Of a DNA stretch of 64,000 nt, positions 3,439 to 39,920 are shown one piece after another. The stretch comes from Tubulanus polymorphus (taxonomy: Eukaryota > Animalia > Nemertea), in contig NC_134035.1 in NCBI RefSeq assembly GCF_964204645.1, forward strand, positions 2,046,001 through 2,110,000, given 5' to 3'. Below the pieces are notes generated by a model. It worked only from the letters and a program-made list of their open reading frames with translations, was not told where the DNA came from and ran no database searches. The first letter of the stretch is position 1; each line of letters opens with the position of its first letter. Both the position numbers and the translations under genes were made by a program.

Positions 3439-3539
3439 TTATTGTTCACAAATTGGCGAAGAGCAACTAACTACTACTAGATAACTAACTACTATGACCC
3501 CTAACTAAAACTTAAAGTACTCAGAGGTCATGGCTACAA

Positions 3540-14339: not shown

Positions 14340-15804
14340 TTAAACTTTTGAACACACCTCAATTTGGTCTCGATACGACCAGAGTGAAAATGTGCAGTCT
14401 GAATAAACAGTTGTATTTACATCCACTTTACACCATATTGAAGAATTGCCAAAAAGTCTTCATTTTCTCATGTTGCAATTACAAAAGATCAGCCATTTTT
14501 GAAATTCTAACAAAATGTTTCTTGTGTTTCCATGCCTCTGAAATATGATTTTTGATGATTTGAAAATAATTTAAAATGGTAGGCATGGAACATATTGTTA
14601 AAATTTATTTAGTTCATAAAATGGAGTCTCTTTTCTCTGATTCAAATCAGTTAAAGACGATTTTTTGACAATCCTTTGAAAACAGTGTCAGATGGATATA
14701 GAAACGATGGTTTATCTGGACTATACAGTTTCACTGGTCCTGTTGAGACCAAGTTGAGAAAAGTTTAAACACGAAAATAAAAGATTTAGTGTGCATTACT
14801 TTGGATAACTGATCTGGGTTTTTTGGCACCCTACACAAATTTAATTTCTTCAACAAAAATGTCAAAAAGATTTCATTTAAAGCGGCTATCAGGATCCAGT
14901 TCCACTGTTCTGGACCCCCCAGTTCCACATTTCTTGATCAGTTTTTTAGATTTAAAACATTCTGAAATAAACCAAATTTCAACTGGTAATGAAAAATGGT
15001 AGGGAATCGTTGGTGCCCTCAAAATGTCTTCAACAGAAAATATCTTTAGGGTCTTATTCATTCATTAGCCTTGCCGTTATACCATTGCGTCCAAAACTGT
15101 TGAACTGCATGTATGGCCTGATGGTTTACTGAATGAAACCCTAAACAAAATATTTTGTTGAAATTTTAAGGTGCGTTAAGCATTTCATTGAACTAATCAA
15201 TACTCGAAAGTGCTGGAGATGTAAAGATTTAAAAAATTCCACCTCAGCACTTAGATAAACAGGCATACTCATGGTTCCCACAGAACGCGGAAATTGGGAA
15301 AAACTTTGGAATTTTGAAATGATAATTCCTAGTTTGGAAATATTTCCAAAAATAAATTTCGGAAATTTTCCTAAAATCAAGGAAATATTTGGGTAATTCA
15401 TTTATATTTTGTGTATTTGCCAAGTGCAACTTTCGTCAGCGAATTCCCTTGAGAATCATCTGTATCAACCAGTCACCGCTAAAATGTTAACTGAAGCATG
15501 ATGATATCGGTTCAGTTCCACTTTGGAAAATTGAAAAATCACCCATGAAATACTTAGAAATTTTTAATCCATGTAACTGTAGTAACCACGCATACTGCTA
15601 TAGTGCGGTAACACTGGGGCCAGATGTTAATGTGTTGTCTCTGAAATTGTTTCTATTAAAACCCAAGGGCTACCCTCCATAGCACTGACTGATTACAGAT
15701 CTGTCATCTGGTGGATTTGTTTACAATCGATATGCCAATTTTCAAATGATGATAAGTGTCGTCGCTCAAATGTTTATGATGTCTCTATTTTGTTTTCTAG
15801 AAAT

Positions 15805-18800
15805 ATGGCTCCAAAACGAAAGCAGATAGTAAGTATTCATTTTTTTGTTCCAATAATATGTCTGTATCTACATTGATACCTAGTATACTTACCTGAGTAG
15901 ATGTGCACTACGTCATCGATATTTTTGAGATAGTGCGCACTATTTCATTGATATATCGGAGCTAGATTTAAATCCCCCGCCCCCACTCCCCCTGGTGTTA
16001 GCGTTCATACCAACCCATCAAAGATACCGTCCACTCCACCTCACTAACCATCCAGGATACAGATGGAATAATGAATTAAATGTGCAATTGAACCCGGGAC
16101 CGGTTATCATTTGATGTTACAATCAATATTCAAAACTGAAACATTTTCTGGGGCCGGTTCCATAGTCAGGTCTTAGACTTAAGATCAGTCTAAGACCAAC
16201 TTGGTTCTATAGCCAATCTAACAACTTAAGACCAGTCTTAAGATTTAAGACCACTTTCGGACTTCAGTCTCGATTGACGTGCAACCACCCCCAGATGCTT
16301 ACTTTTCAAATAATTCTAATGAATGTGAATGTTATTGTTCTTTTCTAACAGCCAGAAGTCCTGGAGGAAATTCCGCCGCCAGTAAGTTTAGATTTCATGA
16401 TATCATTTTATATAAACCTGTTTTGTTTAACCTGGTCCTCTGAAGCCGGTTAGACTGATATTATCTTTAACCCGTGCTCAGGTAACTGAATTCACTTTTA
16501 ATCAAGTTAACCCAGATTTATTAAAGTAAACATTGGTCTCCATAAAACTGGCGCTTAGATTCATTGATCATTTAATGAATGATTTTTACAGATATGAATG
16601 TTAATTCTCTTTTCTAGATTACGATTGAAGCGGAAATTCATTTTGTAAGTTTTCTATTAATCTCCTCGGTGGAATATGATATCTACCATTTTCGCTGAGA
16701 GTCATTGAAACTTCATAACTCTTTAAGCAAGTTGTTACTGATTTCGTCTTCAGTTTGTGCGCGCGCTCACTTACACATACGCTTATATTTGCGCATGTAG
16801 TTCATAATTATCATCAAACTCGTAGTAATAACGATAATAGTAATGATGATAATTACAATTGTCATTTTTAAAGTGCAAATATCCCGATGAAAGGAATTAT
16901 CAAACTGATTTATCGCGTGGTGTTTTTGGTTTTCTCTCATTGTAACAAGTTTACTCTGATGAAATCTTTTTCCAGATATTAAACCTGTCTGGTATTCGTT
17001 TCAATCATGATCTCTGTTAAATGTGTGCTACTCAATATGAAATAACAATGCAATTAATTACTTTTCTTTCATCGCGACAGTTTGCTGCTGCAGCAGCAGC
17101 AACGACAACAGAAGTTTGAATTTTTCTGTTTCATGGACTCTATATCGTTTGAATCAAACTGTAAAACAAACGAATACAGAAATATCAAAGTTACAGAGAT
17201 CAGAGTTTTAATGCAAGAAATTAATGAATTCTCTTTTCTTTTATTGCAACAGAACAGACAAACAGCGACGAATACAGTAAGTTTGAATTTTTCTGTTTAA
17301 TGGACTTTATATTGTTTAAATAAAACCCTAAAACAAACGAATACTGAAATATCGAGGTTTTTCCGAATACAGATATAAAACTTGTCTTTTGTTTTAATTA
17401 TAATATGATCTCCTGTGTTTATTAATGTTTGCTACTGAATATGAAATAATGCAAGAAATTCATGAATTCTCTTCTTTTTTTTTTATTGCGACAGAATTCG
17501 ACGACGACAAGAACAACAACAGCACCAGAAGTAAGTGAGAAGTTTTCTGTATCATGGAATTTCTGTGGTGTTTATTTCTTTCTGACAGACGATGATTTGT
17601 TTGTGATTTTCATCGTATATTTCATACCGGGAACAAAGTCATGAAAATAATCCTGCTTTCAATGAAATAAAATTCCCGTCACTTAGAATTATTTTATAAT
17701 CAAGTTTTTTTTTATATAATATTAGCGCACACAGTAAAATCTGGAAACATTTGCTCACGGATATATGTGCATATATTTTATGTATCTCTTTTATTGATGT
17801 ATTTATATTTACTGTATTTAATGTGTGAACGTGAAATAACAAAACTAAAATGAATTCTCTTTTTTTCTTTCATGTCATCAGCGTAAACAAACAGCAGCAA
17901 AGGCAGTAAGTATTAATTCTTCTGTTACCTTGAAACAACCGATTCTTATGAGTTTTTCATCAGAATTATCATCAATTACAGAATTTAATCGGAGTTCGAT
18001 TCCCTTCGTAACTTATCGTTTTTGACCTGAATGTGAATGTTATTGTTCTTTTCTAACAGCCAGAAGTCCTGGAGGAAATTCCGCCGCCAGTAAGTTTAGA
18101 TTTCATGATATCATTTTATATAAACCTGTTTTGTTTAACCTGGTCCTCTGAAGCCGGTTAGACTGATATTATCTTTAACCCGTGCTCAGCTAACTGAATT
18201 CACTTTTAATCAAGTTAACCCAGATTTATTAAAGTAAACATTGGTCTCCATAAAACTGGCGCTTAGATTCATTGATCATTTAATGAATGATTTTTATAGA
18301 TATGAATGTTAATTCTCTTTTCTAGATAACAGTAGAAGCGGAAATTCATTTTGTAAGTTTTCTATTAATCTCCTCGGTGGAATATGATATCTACCATTTT
18401 TGCTGAGTCATTGAAACTTCATAACTCTTTAAGCAAGTTGTTACTGATTTCGTCTTCAGTTTGTGCGCGCGCTCACTTACACATACGCTTATATTTGCGC
18501 ATGTAGTTCATAATTATCATCAAACTCGTAGTAATAACGATAATAGTAATGATAATAATTACAATTGTCATTTTTAAAGTGCAAATATCCCGATAAAAGG
18601 AATTATCAAACTGATTTATCGCGTGGTGTTTTTGGTTTTCTCTCATTGTAACAAGTTTACTCTGATGAAATCTTTTTCCAGATATTAAACCTGTCTGGTA
18701 TTCGTTTTAATAATGATCTCTGTTAAATGTGTGCTACTCAATATGAAATAACAACGCAATTAATTACTATTCTTTCATCGCGACAGTTTGCTGCTGCTGC

Positions 18801-20510
18801 AGCAGCAACGACAACAGAAGTTTGAATTTTTCTGTTTCATGGACTCTATATCGTTTGAATCAAACTGTAAAACAAACGAATACAGAAATATCAAAGTTAC
18901 AGAGATCAGAGTTTTAATGCAAGAAATTAATGAATTCTCTTTTCTTTTATTGCAACAGAACAGACAAACAGCGACGAATACAGTAAGTTTGAATTTTTCT
19001 GTTTAATGGACTTTATATTGTTTAAATAAAACCCTAAAACAAACGAATACAGAAATTTCAGGGTTTTTCCGAATACAGATATAAAACTTGTCTTTTGTTT
19101 TAATTATAATATGATCTCCTGTGTTTAATGTTTGCTACTGAATATGAAATAATGCAAGAAATTCATGAATTCTCTTCTTTTTTTATTGCGACAGAATTCA
19201 GCGACGACGACGACGACGACAAAAACGACAGCACCAGAAGTAAGTGAGAAGTTTTCTGTATCATGGAATTTCTAGTCGTGTTTATTTCTTTCTGACAGAC
19301 GATGATTTGTTTGTGATTTTCATCGTATATTTCATACCGGGAACAAAGTCATGAAAATAATCCTGCTTTTAATGAAATAAATGCCCGTCACTTAGAATTA
19401 TTTTATAATCAAGTTTTTTTTATATAATATTAGCGCACACAGTAAAATCTGGAAGCATTTGCTCACGGATATATGTGCATATATTTTATGTATCTCTTTT
19501 ATTGATGTATTTATATTTACTGTATTTAATGTGTGAACGTGAAATAACAAAACTAAAATGAATTCTCTTTTTTTCTTTCATGTCATCAGCGTAAACAAAC
19601 AGCAGCAAAGGCAGTAAGTATTAATTCTTCTGTTACCTTGAAACAACCGATTCTTATGAGTTTTTCAACAGAATTATCATCAAAATTACAGAATTTAATC
19701 GGAGTTTGATTCCCTTCGTAACTTATCGTTTTTGACCTGAATGTGAATGTTATTGTTCTTTTCTAACAGCCAGAAGTCCTGGAGGAAATTCCGCCGCCAG
19801 TAAGTTTAGATTTTATGATATCATTTTATATAAACCTGTTTTGTTTAACCTGGTCCTCTGAAGCCGGTTAGACTGGTATTATGTTTAACCCGTGCTCAGT
19901 TAACTGAATTCACTTTTAATCAAGTTAACCCAGATTTATTAAAGTAAACATTGGTCTCCATAAAACTGGCGCTTAGATTCATTGATCATTTAATGAATGA
20001 TTTTTATAGATATGAATGTTAATTCTCTTTTCTAGATAACAGTAGAAGCGGAAATTCATTTTGTAAGTTTTCTATTAATCTCCTCGGTGGAATATGATAT
20101 CTACCATTTTTGCTGAGAGTCATTGAAACTTCATAACTCTTTAAGCAAGTTGTAACTGATTTCGTCTTCAGTTTGTGCGCGCGCTCACTTACACATACGC
20201 TTATATTTGCGCATGTAGTTCATAATTATCATCAAACTCGTAGTAACAACGATAATAGTAATGATGATAATTACAATTGTCATTTTTAAAGTGCAAATAT
20301 CCCGATGAAAGGAATTATCAAACTGATTTATCACGTGGTGTTTTTGGTTTTCTCTCATTGTAACAAGTTTACTCTGATGAAATCTTTTTCCAGATATTAA
20401 ACCTGTCTGGTATTCGTTTTAATAATGATCTCTGTTAAATGTGTGCTACTCAATATGAAATAACAACGCAATTAATTACTATTCTTTCATCGCGACAGTT
20501 TGCTGCTGCT

Positions 20511-20542
<32 letters not shown>

Positions 20543-23500
20543 GACAACAGAAGTTTGAATTTTTCTGTTTAATGGACTCTATATCGTTTGAATCAAACTG
20601 TAAAACAAACAAATACAGAAATATCAAAGTTACAGAGATCAGAGTTTTAATGCAAGAAATTAATGAATTCTCTTTTCTTTTATTGCAACAGAACAGACAA
20701 ACAGCAACGAATACAGTAAGTTTGAATTTTTCTGTTTAATGGACTTTATATTGTTTAAATAAAACCCTAAAACAAACGAATACTGAAATATCGAGGTTTT
20801 TCCCGAATACAGATATAAAACTTGTCTTTTGTTTTAATTATAATATGATCTCCTGTGTTTATTAATGTTTGCTACTGAATATGAAATAATGCAAGAAATT
20901 CATGAATTCTCTCTTTTTTTTATTGCGACAGAATTCGACGACGACAAGAACAACAGCACCAGAAGTAAGTGAGAAGTTTTCTGTATCATGGAATTTCTGT
21001 GGTGTTTATTTCTTTCTGACAGACGATGATTTGTTTCTGATTTTCATCGTATATTTCATACCAGGAACAAAGTCATGAAAATAATCCTGCTTTCAATGAA
21101 ATAAATTCCCGTCACTTAGAATTATTTTATATATCAAGTTTCTTTTATATAACATTAGCACACACAGTAAAATCTGGAAGCATTTGCTCACGGATATATG
21201 TGCATATATTTTATGTATCTCTTATTGATGTATTTATATTTACTGTATTTAACGTGTGAACGTGAAATAACAAAACTAAAAGGAATTCTCTTTTTTTCTT
21301 TCATGTCATCAGCGTAAACAAACAGCAGCAAAGGCAGTAAGTATTAATTCTTCTGTTACCTTGAAACAACCGATTCTTATGAGGTTTTCGTCAGAATTAT
21401 CATCAAAGTTACAGAATTTAATCGGAGTTCGATTCCCTTTGTAACTTATCGTTTTTGACCTGAAAAAAGGCGGCTCTAAATCCAATTCGGTTACAGATAT
21501 CAAACCTGTCTATTTTTGGTTTATTTGTATTGGTCATCAAATTCAATTCTTGGCGCACATTTTTATGCCCATAAACTGGTGCTGATTTTCATAAGCGCAA
21601 CGATTGAATAGATTCCGACTCTTTTTTTTCTTTCGCCTGGTAGATTTTCTGCAAAACAAGATGATGTTTTCCATGGTCGATTTACCAATTCCTAGGCTTT
21701 GTATTAATGAATTTTATTCTTTTACAGCATCACACTGGAACGAGGTCCACGTTGGCGTCCCCAGACATCGAAGTAAGTTTAGATGTATCCGTTCTGTTGG
21801 CTGGTTATCAATTGTAATATGTTGAGACTTGAGATGAAAATGATTTGTATTGTGTTAGTACATGAGGTTAAAGCCTGTTTTTTGTTATGCCGTGTGCGGG
21901 GAAGGCAAAACACAAAACGCCGAACAGCAAAATGTCGTGTCCGTTGAACATTTTATTGTTTGTGGGCAAAACGTGTTCTGAAAAGTGTGTTTTCTGTTTT
22001 GGCGAAACAAATGTTATGCCGGTGCGGCGGGCTTAAGGCGAGTGAATAATTAGGGTATATGAGAAAAAAAGCGGGAATATAAATGAAGAACATTCGTAAC
22101 TCTTTGCCTGCCACGCCTATTTTTCAGGCAATGCTGCGTTTTGCCAGGATTTCCGTGTTTTTCAGAGATTCATAAAACAAAAACAAGAAGAGATATCTTC
22201 TCGTCAAATTTGTTTTATATCTTTGATCTGGTCTTGCATTTTCATGTAAAATAAGCGGCATTTCTTCTAAGAGTGATAAAATCTGTAGCGATAACCAGTG
22301 CAGAGGGAGTATTTTGCAGAATATATGCTCGTTCATGCGTGTTCAGCCCCCATTTCAATAGATGATGTCACTCGCACACTGTATAGAACAACTGATGAGT
22401 TTGTTTAGTAGTAAAAGGCATTAAACTAACTGGTGTTGTGCGATGAATTCGCCATCTATCGTTAGAGTTAAGAACCAAGCCAACCGTATCGGTACGGTTT
22501 TGAGTTAAGAATCAAGCCAACCGTATCGGTACGGTTTTGAGTTAAGAATCAAGCAAACCGTATCGGTACGGTTTTGAGTTAAGAAACAAGCCAACCGTAT
22601 CGGTACGGTTTTGAGTTAAGAAACAAGCCAACCATTTTGCCAGTACGGTTTTGGCAGGAATGTGATGGGAGATAACGAACATACAAGTACGTGTTTGGGT
22701 GGAAATGAGTTAAGGAGCCACGTCGGATCAACCCACCTCCCAGTATATATCATCCAAGGGCATAACTCTTTCAGCACTCACGGGTGATTTGATAAAAAAA
22801 AACACTCAGAGTGCCCATCATTGGTAACATAAAAGTAGGAAAATCGATAGAAACTTTCGAGCTCCATAGAGTGAAAACTGTAAGAGATGAGCTTAATGTT
22901 AATTGAAAGGTTTCTAGGGTATGACTGACCCTTAGAAAAGATTGGTAACAATTTTTTGAAAAATGATCTAATTTGCACGAATTATAGCTCTTTTTAAGAG
23001 CCTCAAAACGCTAAGCGCCACACATGGCATTATAAGTGGATTCGTTGTTTAAGAGACCAGAGAAAAACATTCGACTAAGAAACTCTGTCGTCACAAGGGT
23101 TTGAACCTATAAACCCTGGATTGACGAGACCAGTGACCGGCGGCTTAGTCCACTTGGCCACTGCGCCTCTCCAATTAATTATAGCTCAGCGACCAGTTTA
23201 TTTGCTAACTCCTTAAATTTCAGGTATAGGATAAACAACCCAAGGGCTTAACGACAATTTATTGAAATGTCGTTTTTGAGATGCTCTCACGATTCAATCT
23301 TTTGATGCAATTTTTTGGTAATTCGACTGTATTATTTAACGGGAGGGAGAGTTAATAGCGAAGCAAATATCGCAACTTTTTTGATGCCGTAAAAACCGGA
23401 ATTACAACGATGTTCATATACATTCATACCTAAGCGTTATTTAAAACAGGTTCTCATAGGCGTCCCCAGGAATTTTCATACGGGGTTCGAATAAGCATCA

Positions 23501-29500: not shown

Positions 29501-32500
29501 AACAAAGTCATAAAAATTCTCCTGTTCGTTTTATTAAATAACGATACAGAATCAAAACAATATCTATAACGAGGCATCCGTCGCTTAGAACTCATTTATT
29601 ACGTATATTGATACCTACGTGTGCTACTGAACATAAAATAACAAAACTAAAATTAATTCTCTTTTTTTCTTTCATGGCATCAGTGCAAACAAACAATAAC
29701 AACGACAACAACGAAAGAAGTAAGTTTTGGCCATGTTTTTAGTTTTCGCTCATCACTGACATTACTGATATCTTTCCTCGCAGTCTTAAATCGGCTCCAC
29801 TCAATTTCTCTCATGAAATGCTTTCCATGTTCGAACTACACGTGATCATGAACTTGAAAATGAAAAATGATTAAATCTAAATGTTGCTCGTTTATTTTAT
29901 AGGTCACCAGAAAGCGATGCCGATCCGTCGACGAGGTCAGTTTGAATTCTATCGAATCGTTCTCCCGTTATTACTTTCAATCTGTCTTTTCGTCCATAGA
30001 TAGGATCTCACAATCGCCAGTGGTATAGGCATTGTTCAGCAATTCAAGGGTGCTAATGTCCTAGAAAACCTGGCAATCTCATTGAATCAGAAAGATTGGG
30101 GAATTTGATAGATTTTTACCAAAATCCTGGTCCGTCGGTCGGTCCGTCGGTCGGTGATGTTCACGTCTCTGCACCCACAGCTTATGGTTATTCATGAAGA
30201 CTTGACCATTATTTCCTGTTTTAAGTCGTGTAGATTATTATCATTGTGGTTCAATATAGATTACGACTATCTGAAAGTTGAGATTTACTAAAGAAATGTG
30301 TATCAAAATTCTGAATGTTGATTTCAACTTTTTTTAAAATATTTTACAGCAACCCGTAAGCCCGCCTAAATGTCGGCGAGAGGAGGTAAGTTTCAATTTC
30401 ATTAAATCATTTTCGATATCGATGTTAAATATTGATAACCTTAGCCCTGTTTCATAGACTGTATATCAATAATACCCTAGAGGTATTTCTTCAACCTGAG
30501 CCCGATTTTGTAAACCGGATATCAATGTTACCCAGAGTTGCCAACCGTTCCTGATTTTCGGTATTTGTTACTCTTTTATGACAAGAAATACTGATTTGAT
30601 TTGTTCGATGCATATGAGAAGTATGAAAGATCTAACTGAGGGTCTTACTGTTGATTACTGATTGATTTGAACATTTATTTTCATATTACAATTTGTTACT
30701 GATAGCACTTTTCAGAGGTTGGCAGCCCTGTTGGTTGCCGATAGGTAAATCTTCAACATAGGTGACAACTTCATAATGAAAACCTTGGTAATGACTGAAA
30801 AATTTCAAAATGATCCCAGCTGGTATTATTTTTTCCCAACATCTATGAAACTTGGCTCTGGTGAACGCCTAGCCTCACTGGCAAGCAATTGTGATACTAT
30901 CGTGACCATATGTCACTTGTGATCAGTAAGTGTCATTTACCAAAAACATACGTACATTTTATCTTAATAAATTTTTTGTATTCTTTTTTATAGGACATCA
31001 ATTTATTCGACGACCTTTGGGTAAATATCCTTTTGATCGCCTACTCGTTCTCAGTGAATTTGGAGCCATCCCTTTCATTAGTGGGTGGCTCCATATATAC
31101 TCGCTTTTAGGGTTAGCTAGAATTTTTCATGATATTTCATGTTATTTTGATTACTAGAATGATGATTTCCCAGAGCCGCCGCCGCCGGAGCCCGAGGCTC
31201 CTACCATTATCGTAAGTTGTAAAAGATAATTATTTTCGTAGTTCACCAGATTATTATAATCTGATATTGATTTTCCTGCTGAAATATCCATGTTCTAAGA
31301 GATCCCATAGCATATCTCCACCAAGGTCAAACTTGGCTAAAGCTACGACCAATTTTGCTCGTAGGCTAAAGGCACCTAGTTTTTGCTAGCTTATTTGTTG
31401 TTGGAAAACATAAACACTGGTAATTCTGTTTGCAGCGCTGCAGCCGCTATACGGTATCATGGGTTCAATTCTAAAATGTCATTACTTAGGGGCAGTTCCG
31501 TGGGGGGCTGGTGAATTTGGCTATATTCCTTAAAGATATTTTTTGCCTGACCGCTGCAGCTGCCGCAGTTTAGGGGTCCTAACCAATAAGAATTTTGAAA
31601 TATGTTCTAATTTCCTTGTATCTGGGACATTCTGTTGGATCGAGTTACTTTAAAAAAAAAAATGTTATTCTGACTATATTCCGGAATACAATGGAATCTA
31701 GTTTGGATCCGCTACTGATTAAGCTATATAGAGTAGTATCTTCGGTCCTAAATTAATCACAGCTGAAGCCAGTTATATCTAAAGAGTGTTTGAAAGTAGT
31801 CGCACTCGGTCACAGTTTGTATCGATGCGAATATTCATCTTACCGAGTTCATATTATTCGTAAAATTGGCATTGATAATAGCGTGAAGCAATGTTTTTAA
31901 GTGAAACTAAGAATGTTTAAAAGTTGCGGCTCGGTCACAGTTTTGTATCGATGTGAATATTCTTCAGACCGAGTTAGTAGAATATTGAAATCATGTCACG
32001 CAGCATCCATCGGTTCAATTATCCTCAAAACAGTCTCTAAATCGAGGGTCAACTAAGAATTTCGATCATGGAATCTTTCATCCGTGGTATAGTTATTCAA
32101 AACTTGATTTCAGAATTTTTTTTCTTTACATTTCTAGGAATCGGAAATCGCGCGTATTGTGCAAATTGACGTAAGTTTACAATAGACAATTTCAGTTACA
32201 CATGTTGACACCCAGTGACTTTATAAATACCACCTGCCTGCCATCTACTGACAAAAACTTGAACTTTATTCCATAATGTACACTATACCGTTGTGGTTCT
32301 CATAAATCCGATCATTAGTAACAACCTATAACGTAATAATAACTATTTTTGATGGTTCACCAGATGAGGCTTTTTCTTAAATAGCTTGGTTTACGGGAAC
32401 CGCCTCCCGAAATTTGAAGAAAAGTCAAACAAAAGTAGAATTTTTTTTTACTCCCATCTGTGGAACAAATTCAGTGGAAAACGAGCAAAAAAGTTTTTCA

Positions 32501-35500
32501 CCTTCGCCGAATGAGAATCCCGGCTTGAATGATGAAAAAATTGAAAACCGCGCGTTTATTCTTTTTTTGATCACATTTGTGTGCAGAATTCGAACTTTCC
32601 AAGGATCATTGTTTTGGACATATGTATATTGCCCTATCGATCGTTCCCTCTTCCTTCAAAAACTGTGTTTATCGCGCTGAGCGAGTTCTTTTTTTTAAAT
32701 TTTCCGAAATGATATTTCAATAGTCTACCCTGTCAACCAAGCTATTAAAAAAATGCGAGATTCGAGATAATTTATTCTGATTTTCATAAATGCTAAATTG
32801 AGCTCTTGTTTTTCTTTTTATGTAGAGAAATGAATTCCACACGTGCGTGAATGTGCCGGTAAATATTGTGAACATTTCTATTGAATTTACAGTTGAACAC
32901 AAACGACTGCAGATGAAATATGTCTGAATTTTTGTTGACGTTGTTAAACTAAAGTTGATTTTTTATTTTATAGAAGAGGAAGCTCGAGGTACCGGCATCG
33001 GTGAGTTTGAATTTCATCAAATCATTTTACAGTCCGTTCGTCTGTGTGCCTGTCTCTCCGTCTGTCCGCCTGTCTCTCCGTCTGTCCGCCTGTCTCTCCG
33101 TCTGTCCGCCTGTCTCTCCGTCTGTGTGCCTGTCTCTCCGTCTGTCCGTCTGCCGACGGGATCTTGTGAAAGTTTAAGCTTACGACAAGTATGATTTGTG
33201 ATTGCGACGAGAGTTTGTCGATGCGAAAAAAACCATTTTCCAAGTGGCTTGAACATCTATTTTGGGCATGGAAAAAAAGGCACAAGATTTTCGCGATGGT
33301 AGTACGTGCCTCTTGTGATTGTGGAGAGTTTGTTGAAGCCCTTTTTGCAAGTGGTGTTGTCGTTTCTGCACCCGCAGTTCATGGTTATTCATTTCCATTT
33401 TTTAGTTGTGTAGATTATCATTTTCGTGGCTCACCAAAGATTATTAAGATAATCTGAAATTGAGATTTCCTTCAGAAATATGTTTGAAAATTCTGGATGT
33501 TGATTTCAACTTGTTTTTATTTTATAGGACCCCGTTAGCCCTAAACGGGCACGCGTCGGACCGGTTAAAGTAAGTTTGATTTGAGTCAAATCATTTTAAG
33601 TGAAGCTAATTTCAAATAAGTTTATTGATAATCTGGGCAGGGTTTTATAGACCACATCATTTTCTCCTAGGGGTAAATCCTCAACCGTGGCCTGATTTCA
33701 TAGACCGGGTTTCAATGTTGCCCCTAGCGGTAAATCCTCAACATAGGTGACAACCACCATTGTAACAATGATAAACTATGGTAAAAACTGACAAATTTTT
33801 AAATGTTTCCAGTTGTCCGAGCGTTCAAACCACTTTTCAAGTGATTTTCGCGTCTCTGCACCCACAGTTCATGGTTATTCATGAAGACTTGACCATTATT
33901 TCCTGTTTTAAGTCCTGTAGATTATTATCATTGTGGTTCACCAATGATTATGAGGATATTTTATTGTTTTCAAAATCTGCATCGGAAAAAGAATTAAAAT
34001 AGTGTAGAATTCTTCTGCTTTGGATCTCGTGGCACCAAAAAATCGAAACCAAAAAAAAGTAAAAATACCTAATTCTGGGGCGGCGGGACAGGGAGAGATC
34101 TAGAAATTTATGACAATCGGCTTGATGACCATCGCACGGAACTAACTGAATATCATTGGCTGGAAAACTAGGATCCAGCATCGGTATCTCTTTACTAGAT
34201 CATAACTTCAAACTGTGGAACTGGGTCCAGAACTGCGGAGCCAGGTTCTGTAACTGTGGGACTGGGTCCAGAACTGCGGAGCCAGGTTCTGTAACTGTGG
34301 GACTGGGTCCTGAACTGTGGAACCAAGTTTTATTATATTAAATTGAAATGAATCATTTTCATGTTTTTATAACCAATGGAAATATCGTTTTTTTACTTTC
34401 TAGACTGAAACACCTGCGACGCCGCCGCCGCCGCAAGCTGATGTAAGTTTGAACTATAAGTGAAAATAATTATAATGCATCAAATACACTGAATGTGTTG
34501 ATCATTACTGACACTTCAATGAACAGGAAGACATACAGAATCCCTGAATCTCTCTGGTCCTACTGAGCTATTCACATGTAGAATCCCTGAATCTCTCTGG
34601 TCCTACCGAGCTATTCTGATACCGAATTCTCCAATCAGTAAGAAATCATTTAATGTTTCGATGATTTAATCAATGTCGATTGTTTTGTTTTTTTCCAGAG
34701 AGACGAGATACCGCCGCTGAGGCGATCGCCGCGGCTGAGACGCCGAAGAGTAAGTTATTAGAGCCCTTGCGCTGTCATATATTCAGGTGAAAACTACTCA
34801 AATTAGAGATATCAAATAGTCGGGTATTTTTAACCGTAATGATATGATCCAGTGCTCACTATTAATACAATAAGAGATGCGCGAAAAAATATCGATGCTC
34901 TAATTTGACGACGACTTGTCGCACTTCTTGTTCACTTTCTGTCCCATTAGATTGTCTCACATACCTAAGCGGTGCCATCTGAAGGGATAGCTGGCGTGCC
35001 AGTTCCCTACTGTTCAAATTTCATTAAAGCGATGATGAAAGGATTATCCAATGGACCGGAACTGCTATACATAAACGCCGAATGTACTATAAAGAGAAAT
35101 CAAGAAAAACTTTGAAATTGTGATTTCTTGGTTTGTTTGGAAACTTTGCGCTGCATTAGTTGAGCTCTTGAAATGCTCTTGTTTGCAGGCTCTCTTTCAG
35201 CTTTTGATTTCATATAGGGAATTGGCCCCATTATCTCTCTAATTACGATTCGTGTTATCGAAACGCTAGTAAAAACTGCATGAATTTTGACTTTTTTTGT
35301 TGTTTTCTTAAACCTTAACATCATGATTGTTATTATATTATAGGCAGAAAATGCAGCTGCCGCCCCCGCCGCCCCCGTCGATGCGACGGAAAATGGTAAG
35401 TCTACACATATTCATGATCCTATTTAGATATGTCCGTTTGTAGCCAGACATTTTTAGCAGAGCTGCCCAAACTGTTACTGATTTTCGGTATTTGTTACTA

Positions 35501-37064
35501 TTTTATGACAAGAAATACTGAATTTGTCTCTGATTTGAACAGAAATATGAAAGATGTTACTGAGCGCCTTACTGTTGATAACTGATGATTAATTTAGTTA
35601 ACTGTAACTCACAACTGTGGAACTGGGTCCTGGATCCCGAGTTCAGAGTTAACTTTAACTCGTAACTGTAGAACTGGATCCTGAGTTCAGAGTTAAATCT
35701 AACTCATGTGTGGAACTGGATCCTGAGTTCAGAGTTAACTCTCGCAAATGTAGAACTAGATTCTGAGTTCAGAGTTAACTCATTTGTGGAACTGGATCCA
35801 GCACGTTAAAATTCCCAAAATCATGTCACTCCTGATGGAGTATGACGGCAGTATAACGGACTTTGACTGTATTGTCCACGTGGTAAAACTCCTATTGATC
35901 GTCCATGATTTAATGAAATACTAATAATTTTTCTCATTTATTTATTTTACAGTCATCGAAGAGATAAGGCGGAATATCGCCGCGGATCCGCGGTACTTAC
36001 TTAATTTTTTGACGCGATGTAAGTACAACTTTTTGCATTTATACTCTCTCCTCTCTCTTTCCACTGATCACATCATTTTTCATCCCCCCCCCCCCCCCCC
36101 CCGCTCGTGTTGAGATAAGTATCCTCAACGTACATTGAATAAGGTACTGGCTGCGTACAGATGGCGCAAAAATACACTCGTTGATACGCGATGAAATTAG
36201 TTTATTTTCGAACTCGATTTTCGCTTACAAAATTCAAATATAATCAAACGAATTTTTGTTCGAGCAACTTTCGCGTTGAGGAGAGAATCCCACAATGATA
36301 ATAAAAAGTCCAAAAATGAAACTTCGAGATAGTAGTTTATTTCAACGTTTCGACTATATCCTAATAGTCATCTTCAGGAATAATTCCTGATTATTATGAA
36401 GTTTCATTTTCGGACTTTTTATTATCATTGTGGGATTCTCTCCTCATCGCGTCAACACGGATAAAGTGTTCTACCAATCGTGAACTTTCGCGTATTGATA
36501 AAGCGATGAGTCGGCTACAGTTCAATCGGGAAGTGTCGACGAAATTGAAGCACGGTTATTGAGGAGTAACCACTAGCTGATCCTCGCTTGCCACAGTAAC
36601 GCAGCCACTGCCTCATCAAGCCCCGGGTCTTATTGACGGTACATCCTAGAAATAATTGAAATCGAAAAACGAGATCATTGTTCCCCTTACAGAATTCTGT
36701 ATAACAAAAGCCTATTTATTTTCGTGCGGCGTCAACCATTTTCAGACACATCGTGAAATATCAGTAACTAACGATACACCGCGCCGTGGTGTAGACGCAC
36801 TGTAGTGCTATTCCCGTTATTCAACACACTTGGGTGGAATTTTTCAAAATTTTCAAATTATCTCCAGCACTATAGGGTATTGATCAGTCAGCACTGAAAG
36901 GGTTAATAAGATAAAAAACCAACTTTATTTACAAATTAAAAGAATTCTAAAATCGAGAATTTATTTATGGAAACAATCTAAAACATAAGAACACGACGTT
37001 TCGATCTCACCCTAGAGATCATCGTCAGGTGTGAGATATTGACTAAAAACGGATTAATTATATA

Positions 37065-37096
<32 letters not shown>

Positions 37097-39084
37097 AGAA
37101 CAGGTTAATTGAGTGATTTGGTGAGTAAGTAATTAGTGTTTGGCAAGGCATGAAGTAATATACTCCATATACCATATGTCGCTCATTGTTTTAAACACAT
37201 ACCGCATCAAATTTGGTTTAAATACGACCAGTGATACCGCGCGGTCTGAATAAACCATCGTTTTTGCATCCATTTTACGCTGTTAATTGAAGCATTGCCA
37301 AAAAAGTCTTCTTGAACTGATTTGAATCAGAGAAAATAGACTGCATTTTATGAACTAGATCAATTTTAACAAGTTTCCATGCCTACCATTTAGAATTATT
37401 TCCAAATCATCATGAATCATGGTTTGCGGTTATGGCAGGGGTTGACCTGATGGTTAAGTGATGGTTCGCTGATGGTATGACACCTATTTATTTGTTCATG
37501 TGACTGTACAATACAATGATACAATGTTTAGTTACTTCTGTGCTGTACTGTAGTAACCCTGTCCCGACAACCCTAAACTCTCAACCAGCCCATCAATGTC
37601 ACTCATGGAGACTGATATTGTATTCTTTCCGCATCCCCCATTCTGCTGCATGATGATGTCACAAATTATTGGCAACCAATCACGCTTCAAGTGGAAAGTC
37701 AACCATTTTGTATTAATGAGATTACTAGCTACACTGGGTTCACTGTAAATCTACAAGGGCTGAGCCAGGATTTTTGGAAGGTTTACTGAAGGGCACATGA
37801 GCACTCGTGAAGGGATGAAAGGGGTCTTAAGTGTTTCTCCCCAGAAAATTTTGAAATTTTGTTGCCCGAGGCTATTCGATAGCCATCATCAGGGAATACT
37901 TGATATTTCTTTATAAAATGGAAAAAGAAATTCCTAAAATATCTTGAGGGCACCTCAAGATATTAAAGGCGGGGGACTGGATCCGCCCTTGATATATTAA
38001 TTGTTTCTCCTGATTGTTAATGTATTTCTTTCTATTTTATATTTTACAGTGGAACCAATATTAATTGAGACGGTGGAGGATGGTCCGGAGGACGTGAAAG
38101 AGGCCATAGACCTCTTTCACTTGAACCTTGGTCCTGTCTTGGATGACCAGCTGGCAGACCCCGTTCCAGCTGCTGCCTCCCCGGATAGGCGCCCTAGGCA
38201 GCGGACCCTCCGGCAGCCGCACCCTCTTGCACAGAGGTGGTCCCGTCGCGTGGACGGGCGGCTGTGGGAGGGGGAGTTACGGGAGGTAAGCATCATCTCA
38301 ACATTAACTGTTTTTTTTATATTTCTCTCAGTTTTGATTTCGAATGAATTTCTCTCACACGAACAGTTTTTATGAATCACTTATAATATCTTTTCTTTAA
38401 TAATACTTTCATTTTCAGCGAGCCATCGTCATTTTTTTTTTTGCTTTATTTTCTAACCCTTTAGAATATTGTTTCCCAGATCGCGACGATTTATCTCTTT
38501 GTTTATATGTAATCAATTGTTTCATTATTTCAGCTCGGTTACTGATCCGAAAATTTTCTGTAAAAAATCACTTTTCAACCGATCATTTAGTAAATGAATG
38601 TTTTCTTTTTTTGCAGACGGGCACGCGCACCGCTCGGCATCGAAGACGACGCCGTCCGGCGGTTCGTCGCGGTGGTGTGGCGCCTCCCGAGGGGGAGCGA
38701 CGCGGTGGCGGAGGGGAGGAGATCGGCGTCGTGGCAGTTCCGGAGGTGGTGGAGGCGGTGCCGGTGCCGGAGCCGGAGCCGGAACCGGAACCGGTGTTTG
38801 AACCGGTCCCGGAGCCGGAGCCGGAACCGGAACCGGTAGAAGAGGAGATGGTCGTGGAGGTTGAGGAGGTAAGAGGGGTTCCTCCTGCCCCCGTGGAGCC
38901 GTTGGCCGCTGCCCCGGTTTCGGCGCTGGACAGAGTTCTGTCCAGCGACCGATGCCGCGCCGAAGTGCGGGTGGTGGCTCGCGGTTCCGTGGGACCGTGG
39001 GAGGAGCTTCTATCTTCGGATAGATCAAAGGCTCTTTTACATGATTTAAAATCGGTCTTGTTTAGGCGTGGGTACAGGGAGTAG
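15805..39084 (+). CDS. Multi-micro-exon gene (~46 coding exons, ~762-802 aa); low-complexity Ala/Thr/Pro/basic protein with putative KH-like domain; unknown family
   Basis: Manual splice reconstruction, each exon flanked by a pyrimidine tract + AG and GT (mostly GTAAGT). Exons: 15805-15828, 16352-16381, 16618-16644, (17081-17113), 17253-17276, 17495-17530, 17882-17905, 18060-18089, 18326-18352, (18787-18819), 18959-18982, 19195-19239, 19590-19613, 19770-19799, 20036-20062, (20499-20552), 20692-20715, 20932-20964, 21313-21336, 21728-21772, 25161-25241, 25609-25728, 26480-26506, 26607-26633, 26866-26910, 27442-27489, 27783-27830, 28098-28133, 28426-28473, 28741-28776, 29069-29116, 29393-29419, 29684-29719, 29903-29935, 30350-30385, 30994-31020, 31158-31211, 32138-32170, 32974-33000, 33528-33569, 34404-34442, 34699-34749, 35344-35395, 35953-36018, 38050-38285, 38617-39084. 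Joined they give one stop-free frame from MAPKRKQI to ...FRRGYRE*. Bracketed exons have weak GTTTGA donors. Confidence 0.8.
16148..16294. mobile_element. Small MITE in intron 1 of the coding region
   Basis: Imperfect TIRs ctggggccggttcca / tgcaaccacccccag, with internal reiterated cttaaga palindromes. Confidence 0.55.
16320..21462 (+). repeat. Tandem triplication of a ~1.71-kb unit carrying six micro-exons
   Basis: Units start tgaatgtgaatgttattg at ~16320, ~18028 and ~19738. The PEVLEEIPPP exon recurs at 16352, 18060 and 19770. Confidence 0.95.
22465..22652. repeat. 37-nt minisatellite (~5 copies), each with an AACCGTA-TCGG-TACGGTT palindrome
   Basis: Unit gagttaagaatcaagccaaccgtatcggtacggtttt; period 37 (22502, 22539). 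Confidence 0.9.
23086..23168 (-). mobile_element. tRNA-derived SINE head / tRNA pseudogene
   Basis: Minus strand reads ggcgcagtggccaagtggactaag...ggttcaaaccc: Pol III A-box and B-box. I could not fit a clean cloverleaf. Confidence 0.55.
23455..23725. mobile_element. MITE with perfect 13-bp TIRs
   Basis: cataggcgtcccc ... ggggacgcctatg; flanks gttct/gtttt resemble a 5-bp TSD. Confidence 0.75.
24212..24703. mobile_element. MITE with CAGTGTTGCCACTT-type TIRs
   Basis: cagtgttgccactt ... aagtggcaactctg, flanked on both sides by AATATA. Confidence 0.75.
25161..25728 (+). CDS. Two larger exons (81 and 120 nt) of the micro-exon gene, encoding a putative degenerate KH-like globular domain
   Basis: 25161-25241 + 25609-25728 give EIETVFELKLGTSLRASFQKTLTRKHP-QVIVDTPRVHAIVVVRGPKVAVDNCYEYAHELRDRLVAQE, with good splice sites (tttcag/gtaatg, tttacag/gtaaga). 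The fold call comes from the hydrophobic pattern only. Confidence 0.7.
27280..29420 (+). repeat. Tandem repeat of a ~643-656 bp unit (~3.3 copies), each carrying two micro-exons
   Basis: Homologous ORF-track starts at 27387, 28043, 28686 and 29329; exons QKP..PAR and TKP..PAR alternate. Confidence 0.95.
30533..30730. mobile_element. MITE (CAGAGTTGCCAACC-type TIR); partial second copy at ~35458-35590
   Basis: cagagttgccaacc ... ggttggcagccctg; the internal ctgattttcggtatttgttac sequence recurs at ~35478. Confidence 0.65.
33030..33155. repeat. 20-nt minisatellite (ctgtctctccgtctgtccgc)n
   Basis: Directly visible, ~6 copies; explains ORFs 32955..33285. Confidence 0.9.
36337..36383 (-). ncRNA. 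Minimal type I hammerhead ribozyme motif (Penelope-associated type)
   Basis: Minus strand: UUAUUC-CUGAAGA-U-GACUAU-UAGGAU-AUAGUC-GAAAC-GUU-GAAAUAA. Core CUGANGA/GAAA, 6-bp stem II, palindromic ACGU stem III, bulged stem I. It sits between ~48-bp inverted repeats (~36279-36326 / ~36398-36445). Confidence 0.7.
36991..37032 (-). ncRNA. Minimal type I hammerhead ribozyme motif with GUC cleavage triplet
   Basis: Minus strand: ACAC-CUGACGA-U-GAUCUC-UAGGGU-GAGAUC-GAAAC-GUC-GUGU. Perfect stem I (ACAC/GUGU), 6-bp stem II, intact catalytic core. Confidence 0.8.
38050..39084 (+). CDS. Terminal two exons (38050-38285, 38617-39084) of the micro-exon gene: Arg-rich, (EP)n and helical C-terminal segments
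   Basis: GC-rich coding-like composition; matches ORFs 38001..38375 and 38611..39084; tttacag/gtaagc and ttgcag splice sites; phases agree with upstream exons. Confidence 0.85.
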
Positions 39085-39229
39085 ATGAATCGTAAATGAT
39101 CCAGTAACGAGGTAGGCTTGTTTGTTCACTGCTTCACTGGGTCATTTACGATTCAACTGCTTCCTGTATCCGGGTAATCAGCAGTTCAACGAAACAGTTT
39201 TTTTCATCGGTCATGGTAGTCAGTTAATC

Positions 39230-39920
39230 AGCAGTAGTAGTGTAGTCATTCAGTCAAGTTACGCAGTCATACTAGTCATTTTTTGGTTAGTAGTAGTCAC
39301 TAATTTGTAGTCAGTGACTCGTAGTAGTCATTTTGTCATTAATAGTAATAGTATTGGTGACTCTGTAGCAGTCACTCAATCACAGCAGTCATGATCAGTA
39401 GTAGTCAGTAAGTCTTTATAAGTCAGTTGTAGTAGTCATTTTTTGGTTAGTATTAGTCACTAAGTTGTCAGTGACTCGTAGTAGTCATTTTGTCATTAAT
39501 AGTAATAGTATTGGTGACTCTGTAGCAGTCACTCAATCACAGTAGTCATGATCAGTAGTATTCAGTAAGTCTTTATAAGTCAGTTGTAGTAGTCATTTTT
39601 TGGTTAATAGAAGTCACTTATTTGTAGCCAGTGACTCGTAGTAGTCATTTTGACATTAATAGTAATAGTATTGGTGACTCTGTAGCAGTCACTCAATCAC
39701 AGCAGTCATGATCAGTAGTAGTCAGTAAGTCTTTATAAGTCAGTTGTAGTAGTCATTTTTTGGTTATAAGTTGTAGTCAGTGACTCGTAGTAATCATTTT
39801 GTCATTAATAGTAATAGTATTGGTGACTCTGTAGCAGTCACTCAATCACAGCAGTCATGATCAGTTGTAGTCAGTAAGTCTTTGTCAGTCAGTGACTCGG
39901 TCGTAGTAGTCAGTTGAAAG
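39230..39920 (+). repeat. ~150-160-bp tandem repeat (~4 copies) rich in AGTAGTCA, in the probable 3' UTR or just downstream
   Basis: cattaatagtaatagtattggtgactctgtagcagtcactcaatcaca recurs at ~39337, ~39494, ~39653 and ~39803. Confidence 0.9.

What the first reader, a model, noticed from the sequence alone, without database searches (positions are those of the whole stretch)
15805..39084. Hidden micro-exon gene: 41 consecutive frame-symmetric exons, 39 of them 24-54 nt, encoding a non-secreted, nuclear-looking protein
Seen: across 23 kb of AT-rich DNA, short GC-richer islands are each bounded by a pyrimidine tract + AG and a GT donor (mostly GTAAGT). Every internal one from 16352 to 34749 has a length divisible by 3 and is stop-free in phase 0. 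They join to an ATG exon (MAPKRKQI) and four terminal exons whose phases (0-1, 1-1, 1-0, 0-stop) close correctly, giving ~802 aa (762 without three weak-donor exons). Known: strings of symmetric micro-exons define the Schistosoma micro-exon genes (MEGs), which make protein variants by exon skipping, but those mostly encode signal-peptide-bearing secreted proteins. Inference: here any subset of exons could be skipped in frame, and the protein has no signal peptide and starts with an NLS-like PKRK. It may be a MEG-like combinatorial diversification system for an intracellular or chromatin protein. Standard gene finders would likely fragment or miss it.
Basis: partly seen in the sequence, partly recalled or inferred. 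Interest (0 to 1): 0.92.

Follow-up and report, generated by a model that had tools for sequence, protein, structure and literature searches.

The report
Multi-copy micro-exon gene, disordered protein
A real-looking gene built from about 40 tiny in-frame exons sits here; it is one of at least nine near-identical copies in large duplicated blocks, selection keeps its reading frame and splice sites intact, but no RNA data could show that it is expressed or variably spliced.

Summary
The exon string is real and far beyond chance. The + strand carries 38 GTAAGT in 23.5 kb (about 5 expected); 31 close an in-frame micro-exon, none on the - strand. My model has 41 exons in all (ATG exon, 36 symmetric internal exons, 4 terminal exons) and gives 722 aa.

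It is not a single hidden gene. The locus lies in a duplicated block of at least 50 kb, present at least 9 times at 93-99% identity. At least 35 more distant loci share the last two exons.

Differences among the nine copies show coding constraint. All 47 exon indels are multiples of 3, against 23% in introns. There are no stops, frameshifts or lost donors. pN/pS is 0.26 in the predicted frame and 1.2-1.4 in the other two. Splice regions are 3-9 times more conserved than intron.

The protein has no signal peptide or membrane segment, looks disordered and has NLS-like clusters. No homologue was found.

RNA evidence was unobtainable, so MEG-like combinatorial splicing is untested. Near-perfect, conserved splice sites argue for mostly constitutive splicing.

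First readers of this scan noted the paralogous copies before, on other DNA.

The parts
15805..15828 (+). Exon 1, ATG exon (MAPKRKQI), donor GTAAGT. An acceptor-like TTTTCTAG at 15793-15800 would allow an upstream 5'UTR exon.
   Evidence: identical in all 9 copies
16352..16381 (+). Micro-exon, 30 nt (PEVLEEIPPP); cassette copy 1, exon a
16618..16644 (+). Micro-exon, 27 nt (ITIEAEIHF); cassette 1, exon b
17253..17276 (+). Micro-exon, 24 nt (NRQTATNT); cassette 1, exon c
17495..17530 (+). Micro-exon, 36 nt, Thr-rich and variable; cassette 1, exon d
   Evidence: length differs among paralogues by multiples of 3 only
17882..17905 (+). Micro-exon, 24 nt (RKQTAAKA); cassette 1, exon e
18060..18089 (+). 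Micro-exon, 30 nt; cassette 2, exon a
18326..18352 (+). Micro-exon, 27 nt; cassette 2, exon b
18959..18982 (+). Micro-exon, 24 nt; cassette 2, exon c
19195..19239 (+). Micro-exon, 45 nt, Thr-rich and variable; cassette 2, exon d
19590..19613 (+). Micro-exon, 24 nt; cassette 2, exon e
19770..19799 (+). Micro-exon, 30 nt; cassette 3, exon a
20036..20062 (+). Micro-exon, 27 nt; cassette 3, exon b
20692..20715 (+). Micro-exon, 24 nt; cassette 3, exon c
20932..20964 (+). Micro-exon, 33 nt, Thr-rich and variable; cassette 3, exon d
21313..21336 (+). Micro-exon, 24 nt; cassette 3, exon e
21728..21772 (+). Micro-exon, 45 nt (HHTGTRSTLASPDIE)
25609..25728 (+). 120-nt symmetric exon, donor GTAAGA; the only non-repetitive, structured-looking internal exon
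   Evidence: 8 of 11 variable sites fall at codon position 3; pN/pS 0.11 in frame against 3.2-4.4 out of frame; found only in the close family
26480..26506 (+). Micro-exon, 27 nt (TLKEKRKME), basic
26607..26633 (+). Micro-exon, 27 nt (RERKKKALE), basic
26866..26910 (+). Micro-exon, 45 nt, Ala-rich; NAGNAG alternative acceptor at 26863
27445..27489 (+). Micro-exon, 45 nt, '...PAR' type; alternative acceptor at 27442
27783..27830 (+). Micro-exon, 48 nt, '...IPAR' type; start of the ~643-bp two-exon cassette array
28101..28133 (+). Micro-exon, 33 nt, '...IPAR' type; alternative acceptor at 28098
28426..28473 (+). Micro-exon, 48 nt, '...IPAR' type
28744..28776 (+). Micro-exon, 33 nt, '...IPAR' type; alternative acceptor at 28741
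29069..29116 (+). Micro-exon, 48 nt, '...IPAR' type
29393..29419 (+). Micro-exon, 27 nt (KPTAAAPKE)
29684..29719 (+). Micro-exon, 36 nt, Thr-rich
29903..29935 (+). Weak-site micro-exon, 33 nt (VTRKRCRSVDE), donor GTCAGT, poor acceptor score; candidate for alternative use
   Evidence: (two paralogues carry +3-nt in-frame insertions)
30350..30385 (+). Micro-exon, 36 nt (QPVSPPKCRREE), carries an SPxK site
   Evidence: exon-confined substitution cluster
31158..31211 (+). Micro-exon, 54 nt, acidic and Pro-rich; identical in all copies
32138..32170 (+). Micro-exon, 33 nt (ESEIARIVQID)
32977..33000 (+). Micro-exon, 24 nt (RKLEVPAS), donor GTGAGT; alternative acceptor at 32974
33528..33569 (+). Micro-exon, 42 nt (SPKR / KRAR basic cluster)
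34404..34442 (+). Micro-exon, 39 nt, Pro-rich
34699..34749 (+). Micro-exon, 51 nt (contains RRSPRLRRRR)
   Evidence: 9-10 mostly synonymous changes confined to the exon in three paralogues
35344..35395 (+). Terminal exon T1, 52 nt, phase 0 to 1
   Evidence: paralogue deletions of 6 nt only
35953..36018 (+). Terminal exon T2, 66 nt, phase 1 to 1
   Evidence: only synonymous differences in six paralogues
38050..38285 (+). Terminal exon T3, 236 nt, phase 1 to 0, donor GTAAGC
   Evidence: about 50% identical relatives at 35 or more other loci
38617..39084 (+). Terminal exon T4, 468 nt including the stop: Arg-rich, then a PEPEPE acidic tract, then a conserved C-terminal ~65 aa
   Evidence: 9 copies at 98-100% aa identity, 35 or more at 45-47% over the C-terminal part
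30994..31020 (+). Unverified extra candidate micro-exon, 27 nt (DINLFDDLW), donor GTAAAT
   Evidence: intact in all 9 copies, but divergence is too low to discriminate

Best explanation
Window 15805-39084 (+) is one copy of a lineage-specific, multi-copy protein-coding gene.

Shown here:
- About 41 exons are joined through near-perfect splice sites, and 36 consecutive internal exons are phase-0 symmetric (35 of them 24-54 nt).
- Much of the string arose by tandem duplication of exon-intron cassettes: a 1.7-kb five-exon unit repeated 3 times and a 0.64-kb two-exon unit repeated about 3 times.
- Cassette copy number differs among paralogues.
- The reading frame, the splice signals and the amino-acid sequence are under purifying selection across nine copies.
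- The two last exons are shared with at least 35 more distant loci.

Inferred:
- The product is a soluble, largely disordered protein of about 720 aa, rich in Ala, Pro, Glu, Thr and Arg.
- It has several NLS-like basic clusters, S/T-P sites, an RRSPRL motif, an acidic PEPEPE tract and a small helical C-terminal domain. It most likely acts in the nucleus as a modular string of short linear motifs.
- Most micro-exons are probably spliced constitutively by intron definition. Alternative use is likely limited to the weak-site exons and the NAGNAG acceptors.
- Diversity arises mainly at the DNA level, between paralogues.
For: - Exon string is non-random.
- The model translates with a single terminal stop, 722 aa.
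- Nine copies at 93-99% DNA identity keep the same ordered chain and the same ATG exon.
- There are no stops, frameshifts or lost donors in any copy; the only acceptor changes are 3-nt NAGNAG shifts.
- 47 of 47 unique exon indels are multiples of 3, against 63 of 275 in introns.
- pN/pS is 0.26 for micro-exons, 0.25 for terminal exons and 0.11 for the 120-nt exon in the predicted frame, against 0.7-4.4 in the other frames.
- Unique substitutions are 53 synonymous, 54 nonsynonymous and 0 stop. The null expectation is 33/71/2.4, and none of 2000 simulations reached the observed synonymous count.
- Divergence is 0.0047 in the 20 nt before acceptors and 0.0016 in the 8 nt after donors, against 0.0135-0.0154 in flanking intron.
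- T3-like and T4-like exons lie about 1.3 kb apart on the same strand at 35 or more distant loci.
- No hydrophobic segment: the highest 19-aa Kyte-Doolittle window is 1.01 and the N-terminal 30 aa average -0.6. 76% of residues are disorder-promoting. Basic clusters and SPxK/R sites are present.
- 36 of 40 donors are GTAAGT and the median intron is 340 nt.
Against: - There is no transcript evidence. The single candidate RNA run laid nothing, and the three holder runs are DNA.
- No AATAAA or ATTAAA occurs within 2.4 kb after the stop.
- No homologue exists outside this genome, and there is no Pfam, PDB or Atlas match for the searchable exons. Function therefore rests on composition and short motifs only.
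- The AlphaFold model of the last exon has low confidence, mean pLDDT 59.
- Many exon indels lie in trinucleotide-repeat tracts, where slippage alone favours multiples of 3.
- Nonsynonymous divergence is about equal to intron divergence. The low pN/pS comes from an unexplained excess at synonymous sites.
- With nine near-identical copies, selection on the family does not prove that this particular copy is expressed.
Confidence: 0.7

Rival explanations
1. MEG-like combinatorial system. Because all internal exons are symmetric, many subsets are skipped in frame, producing a large repertoire of protein variants from each copy.
For: All 36 internal exons are phase-0 symmetric. Three or four exons have weak sites, and five acceptors are NAGNAG tandems. 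The gene belongs to a multi-copy, fast-diversifying family, as MEGs do.
Against: It is untested, because no RNA was available. 36 of 40 donors are the perfect U1-complementary GTAAGT. Acceptor and donor regions are 3-9 times more conserved than intron, and introns are short. That is the anatomy of efficient constitutive intron-definition splicing. The visible diversification is genomic rather than by splicing.
Confidence: 0.15
2. Silent relic. The locus is an unexpressed copy inside a young segmental duplication. The intact frame reflects the recency of duplication and gene conversion from a functional family member, not function of this copy.
For: The copies are only 1-4% diverged. The expected number of stops under neutrality is only 2.4, so P(0) = 0.07. 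There is no RNA support and no canonical poly(A) signal nearby. Decayed, scrambled fragments of the gene lie next to it.
Against: Differences that arose after duplication are themselves filtered: 47 of 47 exon indels are in frame, there is a synonymous excess, and splice regions are conserved. All nine copies are intact, whereas the neighbouring fragments show what decay looks like here: a 3-nt gap, 82-92% identity and scrambled order.
Confidence: 0.1
3. Spliced non-coding RNA gene. The exons are real but the transcript is not translated.
For: Other first-reader notes in this region propose spliced non-coding repeat genes. No protein homologue was found.
Against: The selection is frame-specific: pN/pS is 0.26 against 1.2-1.4 in the other frames. 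Exon indels occur only in multiples of 3. The 2.2-kb spliced frame is open with a good start context.
Confidence: 0.03
4. Cargo gene of a giant mobile element that has copied itself to nine places.
For: There are nine dispersed copies on three contigs. A first-reader note describes a 29-kb DNA transposon elsewhere in this genome.
Against: The shared block is at least 50 kb, with variable internal rearrangements, and it includes satellite arrays. Neighbouring copies lie 77.8 kb and 81.7 kb apart, as in tandem segmental duplication. No transposase-like ORF of 75 aa or more lies in the flanks.
Confidence: 0.02

Closest known systems
Schistosoma micro-exon genes (MEGs)
   Same: Most of the coding sequence lies in very short symmetric exons between conventional end exons. 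The MEG abstract gives 3-81 bp exons spaced by long introns (PMC10526429, shown). Both are multigene families with fast diversification.
   Different: MEGs encode small secreted proteins of flatworms, and their variation by exon skipping is documented. Here the product is about 720 aa, has no signal peptide, looks nuclear and has no detectable homology; skipping is untested. Introns here are short, with a median of 340 nt.
Titin PEVK exon array (own knowledge, not tested here)
   Same: A long run of short symmetric exons made by tandem duplication of multi-exon cassettes. It encodes a disordered Pro/Glu-rich chain whose length is tuned in exon units.
   Different: PEVK exons are about 75-90 nt and sit inside a giant Ig/Fn3 muscle protein. 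Here the exons are 24-54 nt, the composition is Ala/Pro/Glu/Thr/Arg, and no Ig/Fn3 or other Pfam domain is found.
Phase-symmetric exons encoding intrinsic disorder (general principle, PMC3632108)
   Same: Symmetric exons coincide with disordered, modular protein segments that can be duplicated or shuffled without breaking the frame.
   Different: That work describes a statistical tendency across human genes. This locus is an extreme case, in which almost the whole protein is built that way.
HMGN nucleosome-binding proteins (own knowledge; resemblance only)
   Same: The N-terminus reads M(A)PKRK and is encoded by a tiny first exon. There is an RRSxRL motif like the HMGN nucleosome-binding core, and an acidic C-terminal tract.
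   Different: HMGNs are mostly ~100-aa vertebrate proteins with 6 exons. Only two short motifs match, and no profile test was possible: the exon is 17 aa and joined exons were not searched.
Fibrillar collagen 54-bp exon series (own knowledge)
   Same: Dozens of short symmetric exons derive from one ancestral unit.
   Different: There is no Gly-X-Y repeat here and no signal peptide.

Membership tests
Schistosoma MEG family | Most of the CDS lies in symmetric micro-exons (multiples of 3, up to about 81 nt) between longer end exons | tested here: met
   36 of 36 internal exons are divisible by 3, and 35 of them are 24-54 nt
Schistosoma MEG family | N-terminal signal peptide, secreted product | tested here: not met
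   The N-terminal 30 aa have a mean Kyte-Doolittle value of -0.6. The highest 19-aa window in the whole protein is 1.01
Schistosoma MEG family | Sequence relationship to known MEG proteins or flatworm origin | tested here: not met
   T4 has no relative among 1.84 billion representatives apart from low-complexity PEPEPE matches. Pfam has nothing for T3, T4 or the 120-nt exon. The micro-exons are too short to search singly
Schistosoma MEG family | Protein variants produced by in-frame exon skipping | not testable with these tools
   The only candidate RNA run laid 0 contigs. The other runs are DNA
Titin-PEVK-type exon arrays | Array of short symmetric exons generated by tandem duplication of multi-exon cassettes | tested here: met
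   A 1.7-kb five-exon unit is repeated 3 times and a 0.64-kb two-exon unit about 3 times. Copy number varies among paralogues
Titin-PEVK-type exon arrays | Embedded in an Ig/Fn3 sarcomeric protein; ~28-aa PEVK modules | tested here: not met
   No Pfam domain in the searchable exons. The modules are 8-18 aa and rich in A, P, E, T and R
HMGN | Nucleosome-binding domain core RRSARLSA with flanking Lys/Pro-rich sequence | tested here: inconclusive
   Only RRSPRL, followed by RRRR, is present. No profile search was possible on a 17-aa exon
HMGN | Match to the Pfam HMG14/17 profile | not tested
Fibrillar collagen exon series | Gly-X-Y triplet repeat in every short exon | tested here: not met
   Gly accounts for 20 of 722 residues, and there is no triplet periodicity

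The most novel reading that the evidence does not exclude
The family could be a genomic diversification system for a chromatin-binding disordered protein with HMGN-like traits: a PKRK start, an RRSxRL arginine anchor and an acidic tail. In this reading each micro-exon is one linear-motif module. Modules would be diversified between copies by cassette gain and loss and by exon-confined, template-driven micro-conversion. That process rewrites exons, mostly synonymously, while leaving the flanking introns untouched. In-frame skipping of the weak-site exons would add further variation.
Probability: 0.12. Interest if true: 0.85.

Novelty: new variant of a known kind. Interest (0 to 1): 0.6.

Why it matters
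If it is expressed, this is an unusually pure example of a protein assembled from 8-18-aa exon modules: 36 consecutive symmetric micro-exons. Unlike MEGs it appears to be intracellular, and it lies in a family that is still being duplicated. Nine copies that differ by whole cassettes and by in-frame indels give a natural series for asking how micro-exons are born, how they are recognised by the spliceosome, and how disordered proteins tolerate the gain and loss of modules.

The family is absent from a library built from about 15 billion predicted proteins. First readers flagged many similar loci in this genome. Standard annotation of this organism may therefore be missing a whole class of genes.

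Substitution clusters confined to exons and mostly synonymous, between almost identical introns, are not explained by ordinary point mutation. They deserve a mechanistic follow-up.

Tried and rejected
- RNA support. The look-up of sequencing runs gave three DNA holders and one small 'RNA?' run. Read laying on 33271-39270 laid nothing from that run and gave only DNA-type joints at repeats from the others. This is no evidence either way.
- Homology. Pfam on T2, T3, T4 and the 120-nt exon gave only a sub-threshold PARP low-complexity hit. The exhaustive HMMER search of T4 gave 12 weak hits, all on the PEPEPE tract, and not even a self match. The ESM Atlas gave nothing usable. PDB sequence search gave nothing significant.
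- Structure. AlphaFold2 on T4 alone gave mean pLDDT 59. That is too poor for a fold search, so none was run.
- Rfam on the whole window gave no match.
- Transposon idea. It was rejected because the shared block is at least 50 kb, has about 80-kb tandem spacing and carries no transposase-like ORF.
- Extra exons. The position-weight scan found none beyond NAGNAG variants. Loose candidates could not be discriminated because paralogue divergence is too low.
- Distant family. Its exon structure upstream of T3/T4 is therefore unknown.
- Joined protein. It was built only inside local scripts, for length, stop count, composition, motif counts and substitution classification. Exons were searched singly, by reference.
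Full report
**1. The observation**

The region is AT-rich (intron GC 0.35) with short GC-richer islands (micro-exon GC 0.52).
- The ATG exon is at 15805-15828 (MAPKRKQI, start context A at -3 and G at +4).
- A run of islands follows. Each is preceded by a pyrimidine tract + AG and followed by GT.
- Four terminal exons of 52, 66, 236 and 468 nt have phases 0-1, 1-1, 1-0 and 0-stop.

My model has 41 exons in all. Spliced inside a local script, it gives 2169 nt and 722 aa with one stop at the very end. All 36 internal exons (16352-34749) are divisible by 3, and 35 of them are 24-54 nt. 36 of the 40 donors are exactly GTAAGT. The median intron is 340 nt, range 100-3836.

This is far beyond chance.

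| Sequence scanned | GTAAGT count | with tract + AG 15-60 nt upstream | with open length divisible by 3 |
|---|---|---|---|
| + strand of the locus | 38 | 32 | 31 |
| - strand of the locus | 9 | 0 | 0 |
| rest of window, + strand | 7 | 1 | 0 |
| rest of window, - strand | 10 | 2 | 1 |
| Markov simulations, mean | 5.0 | 0.8 | 0.16 |

A weight-matrix scan trained on the strong exons found nothing more than NAGNAG alternative acceptors at five exons. The extra candidate 30994-31020 is intact in every copy but cannot be verified.

**2. It is a family, not a lone gene**

The window is contig C11:2046001-2110000 of a 268-Mb assembly.

The last exon (T4) occurs nine times at 98-100% amino-acid identity: six on C11, two on C9 and one on C8. 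At least 35 further loci are 45-47% identical over its C-terminal ~65 residues. They lie in arrays spaced about 31-46 kb apart near the ends of contigs C6, C3 and C8. T3-like exons (about 50% identity) lie about 1.3 kb upstream of those T4-like exons on the same strand, so the two-exon 3' architecture is old and conserved.

I fetched 28 kb around each of the eight close paralogues. The whole locus, introns included, aligns at 93-99% identity.

The shared block is much larger than the gene. It runs from about window 3000 to beyond 52500, into the satellite arrays. Neighbouring copies are 77.8 kb and 81.7 kb apart. No transposase-like ORF lies in the flanks. This is large segmental duplication in chromosome-end regions, not a mobile element.

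First readers of this scan had already noted several of these paralogues as 'hidden' micro-exon genes on other DNA. By my coordinates, s1-492671, s1-492678 and s1-492696 are paralogues C, D and H.

**3. Is it coding?**

Because the copies differ by 1-4%, the differences themselves can be tested.
- Every copy keeps the identical ATG exon and the same ordered exon chain. No copy has a stop, a frameshift or a lost donor. The only acceptor changes are 3-nt NAGNAG shifts.
- All 47 unique indels inside exons are multiples of 3, against 63 of 275 in introns, where 1- and 2-nt indels dominate. A caveat applies: many exon indels lie in ACN/GCN repeat tracts, where slippage favours multiples of 3.
- pN/pS in the predicted frame is 0.26 for micro-exons, 0.25 for T2-T4 and 0.11 for the 120-nt exon. 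In the two other frames it is 1.2-1.4, 0.7-0.9 and 3.2-4.4 respectively.
- Unique substitutions are 53 synonymous, 54 nonsynonymous and 0 stop. A spectrum-matched null gives 33/71/2.4. None of 2000 simulations reached 53 synonymous changes; P(no stop) is 0.07.
- Splice signals are conserved. Divergence is 0.0047 in the 20 nt before acceptors and 0.0016 in the 8 nt after donors, against 0.0135-0.0154 in flanking intron.

Together these results show a spliced, translated reading frame under selection in the family.

**4. How the gene is built and how it varies**

A 1.7-kb unit of five micro-exons is repeated three times (16320-21464). A ~0.64-kb unit of two Ala/Thr/Pro-rich '...IPAR' exons is repeated about three times (27.7-29.2 kb). 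Several acceptor modules in different introns resemble each other.

Paralogues differ in cassette number. One copy has two five-exon units, and the copies carry 3-7 '...PAR'-type exons. The Thr- and Ala-rich exons also differ in length, always in frame. So the diversification that can actually be seen is genomic.

**5. What the protein looks like**

These figures were computed locally on the spliced model; the joined protein was not sent to any search or fold tool.
- It is 722 aa and rich in A, P, E, T and R. 76% of its residues are disorder-promoting.
- No hydrophobic window reaches membrane or signal-peptide level. The maximum is 1.01, and the N-terminal 30 aa average -0.6.
- It has several basic clusters (PKRK, KRKME/RERKKK, KRCR, KRAR, RLRRRR, HRRRRR) and three [ST]Px[KR] sites.
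- It has an RRSPRL motif and an acidic PEPEPE...EEE tract.

The searchable exons have no match in Pfam, PDB or the Atlas. T4 has no relative among 1.84 billion representative proteins beyond low-complexity hits, and not even a self match. AlphaFold on T4 alone predicts four C-terminal helices at low confidence, mean pLDDT 59.

'Non-secreted' follows directly from the sequence. 'Nuclear' is a reasonable inference only.

**6. Splicing**

No RNA could be brought to bear. The run search returned three DNA holders and one small 'RNA?' run. That run laid nothing on 33271-39270. The combinatorial-skipping idea is therefore untested.

The anatomy speaks for efficient constitutive intron-definition splicing of most exons:
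- the donors are perfect GTAAGT;
- the pyrimidine tracts are strong;
- the introns are short;
- the splice signals are selectively conserved.

The candidates for alternative use are 29903-29935, 32977-33000, the 120-nt exon with its GTAAGA donor, the unverified 30994-31020, and the five NAGNAG acceptors. No AATAAA or ATTAAA lies within 2.4 kb after the stop, so the 3' end is undefined.

**7. An unexplained pattern**

Exons diverge more than introns. Codon position 3 differs at 0.031, against 0.0135 in flanking intron, while positions 1 and 2 sit near the intron rate. The excess also holds at non-CpG sites.

The changes come as tight clusters confined to exon interiors, between almost identical introns:
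- 9-10 mostly synonymous changes lie in the 51-nt exon 34699-34749 in three paralogues;
- 7-8 changes lie within 16 nt of exon 30350-30385;
- 4 changes lie within 7 nt of exon 16618-16644;
- changes at exact 3-nt spacing lie in the 120-nt exon.

The same pattern holds between the internal cassette copies.

Older, inverted, scrambled fragments of the gene lie just downstream (43664-45699 here, and similar ones beside other copies). They carry some of the alternative alleles. Short gene-conversion tracts from diverged exon copies, filtered by selection, are my best guess. An exon-targeted raised mutation rate is the alternative. Neither was tested.

**8. Comparison and verdict**

The architecture is MEG-like and PEVK-like, but membership in either family fails. 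The product is not secreted, shows no homology and has no Ig/Fn3 context. The PKRK start, the RRSxRL motif and the acidic tail recall HMGN proteins, but that rests on two short motifs and could not be tested.

I rate it a new variant of a known kind. It is a lineage-specific, recently amplified family of micro-exon genes for an intracellular disordered protein. It is well supported as coding by comparative evidence and unproven at the RNA level.

Noticed in passing
window 34699-34749, 30350-30385, 16618-16644, 25609-25728 (and the paralogue loci L009-L032): Substitution clusters between paralogues are confined to exon interiors and are mostly synonymous, while 100 nt or more of flanking intron is nearly identical. 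Codon position 3 diverges 2.3 times faster than intron.
   Followed up: partly
window 43664-45699 (- orientation): An inverted, scrambled partial copy of the gene lies here at 82-97% identity. It includes pieces containing exons 33528-33569, 34699-34749 (with a 3-nt gap), T1, T2 and T3. Similar fragments lie beside other copies and share some alternative exon alleles.
   Followed up: partly
window ~3000 to beyond 52500; G000 C11, C9, C8: The gene sits in a duplicated block of at least 50 kb, present at least 9 times. Neighbouring copies lie 77.8 and 81.7 kb apart. The close copies cluster in the first 3 Mb of C11, the first 1.6 Mb of C9 and the last 2.7 Mb of C8. The distant family arrays also lie near contig ends.
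   Followed up: partly
window 39273-39893: A 160-bp tandem repeat of about 4 copies begins 190 nt after the stop codon and is shared by the paralogues. No AATAAA or ATTAAA lies within 2.4 kb of the stop.
   Followed up: no
window 52500-58000: Satellite arrays here give long open frames in three phases (repeated SWTVSLSVASRGRYRYQLRLVDGIAISCV-type units). They are part of the same duplicated block.
   Followed up: no
window 3511-4432: A ~0.95-kb repeat at 96% identity is found at the extreme starts of contigs C8, C4 and C10, and in tandem arrays on small contigs (C30 with a 4.6-kb period, C63 with a 6.3-kb period). This looks like a subtelomere-type element.
   Followed up: no
window ~8129-8805: A ~670-bp dispersed repeat has copies at 93-95% identity on most large contigs. 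It is likely a non-autonomous mobile element.
   Followed up: no
window 122-640 (+) and 1824-2465 (-): One ORF resembles the C-terminal tail of a retroelement reverse transcriptase. The other is a hydrophobic, GPCR-like 213-aa ORF. Both calls are by eye only. The stretch 796-3438 is itself repeated on C11 and C9.
   Followed up: no
window 26863/26866, 27442/27445, 28098/28101, 28741/28744, 32974/32977: NAGNAG tandem acceptors would add or drop one codon (Q or K). In some paralogues only the upstream AG survives.
   Followed up: partly
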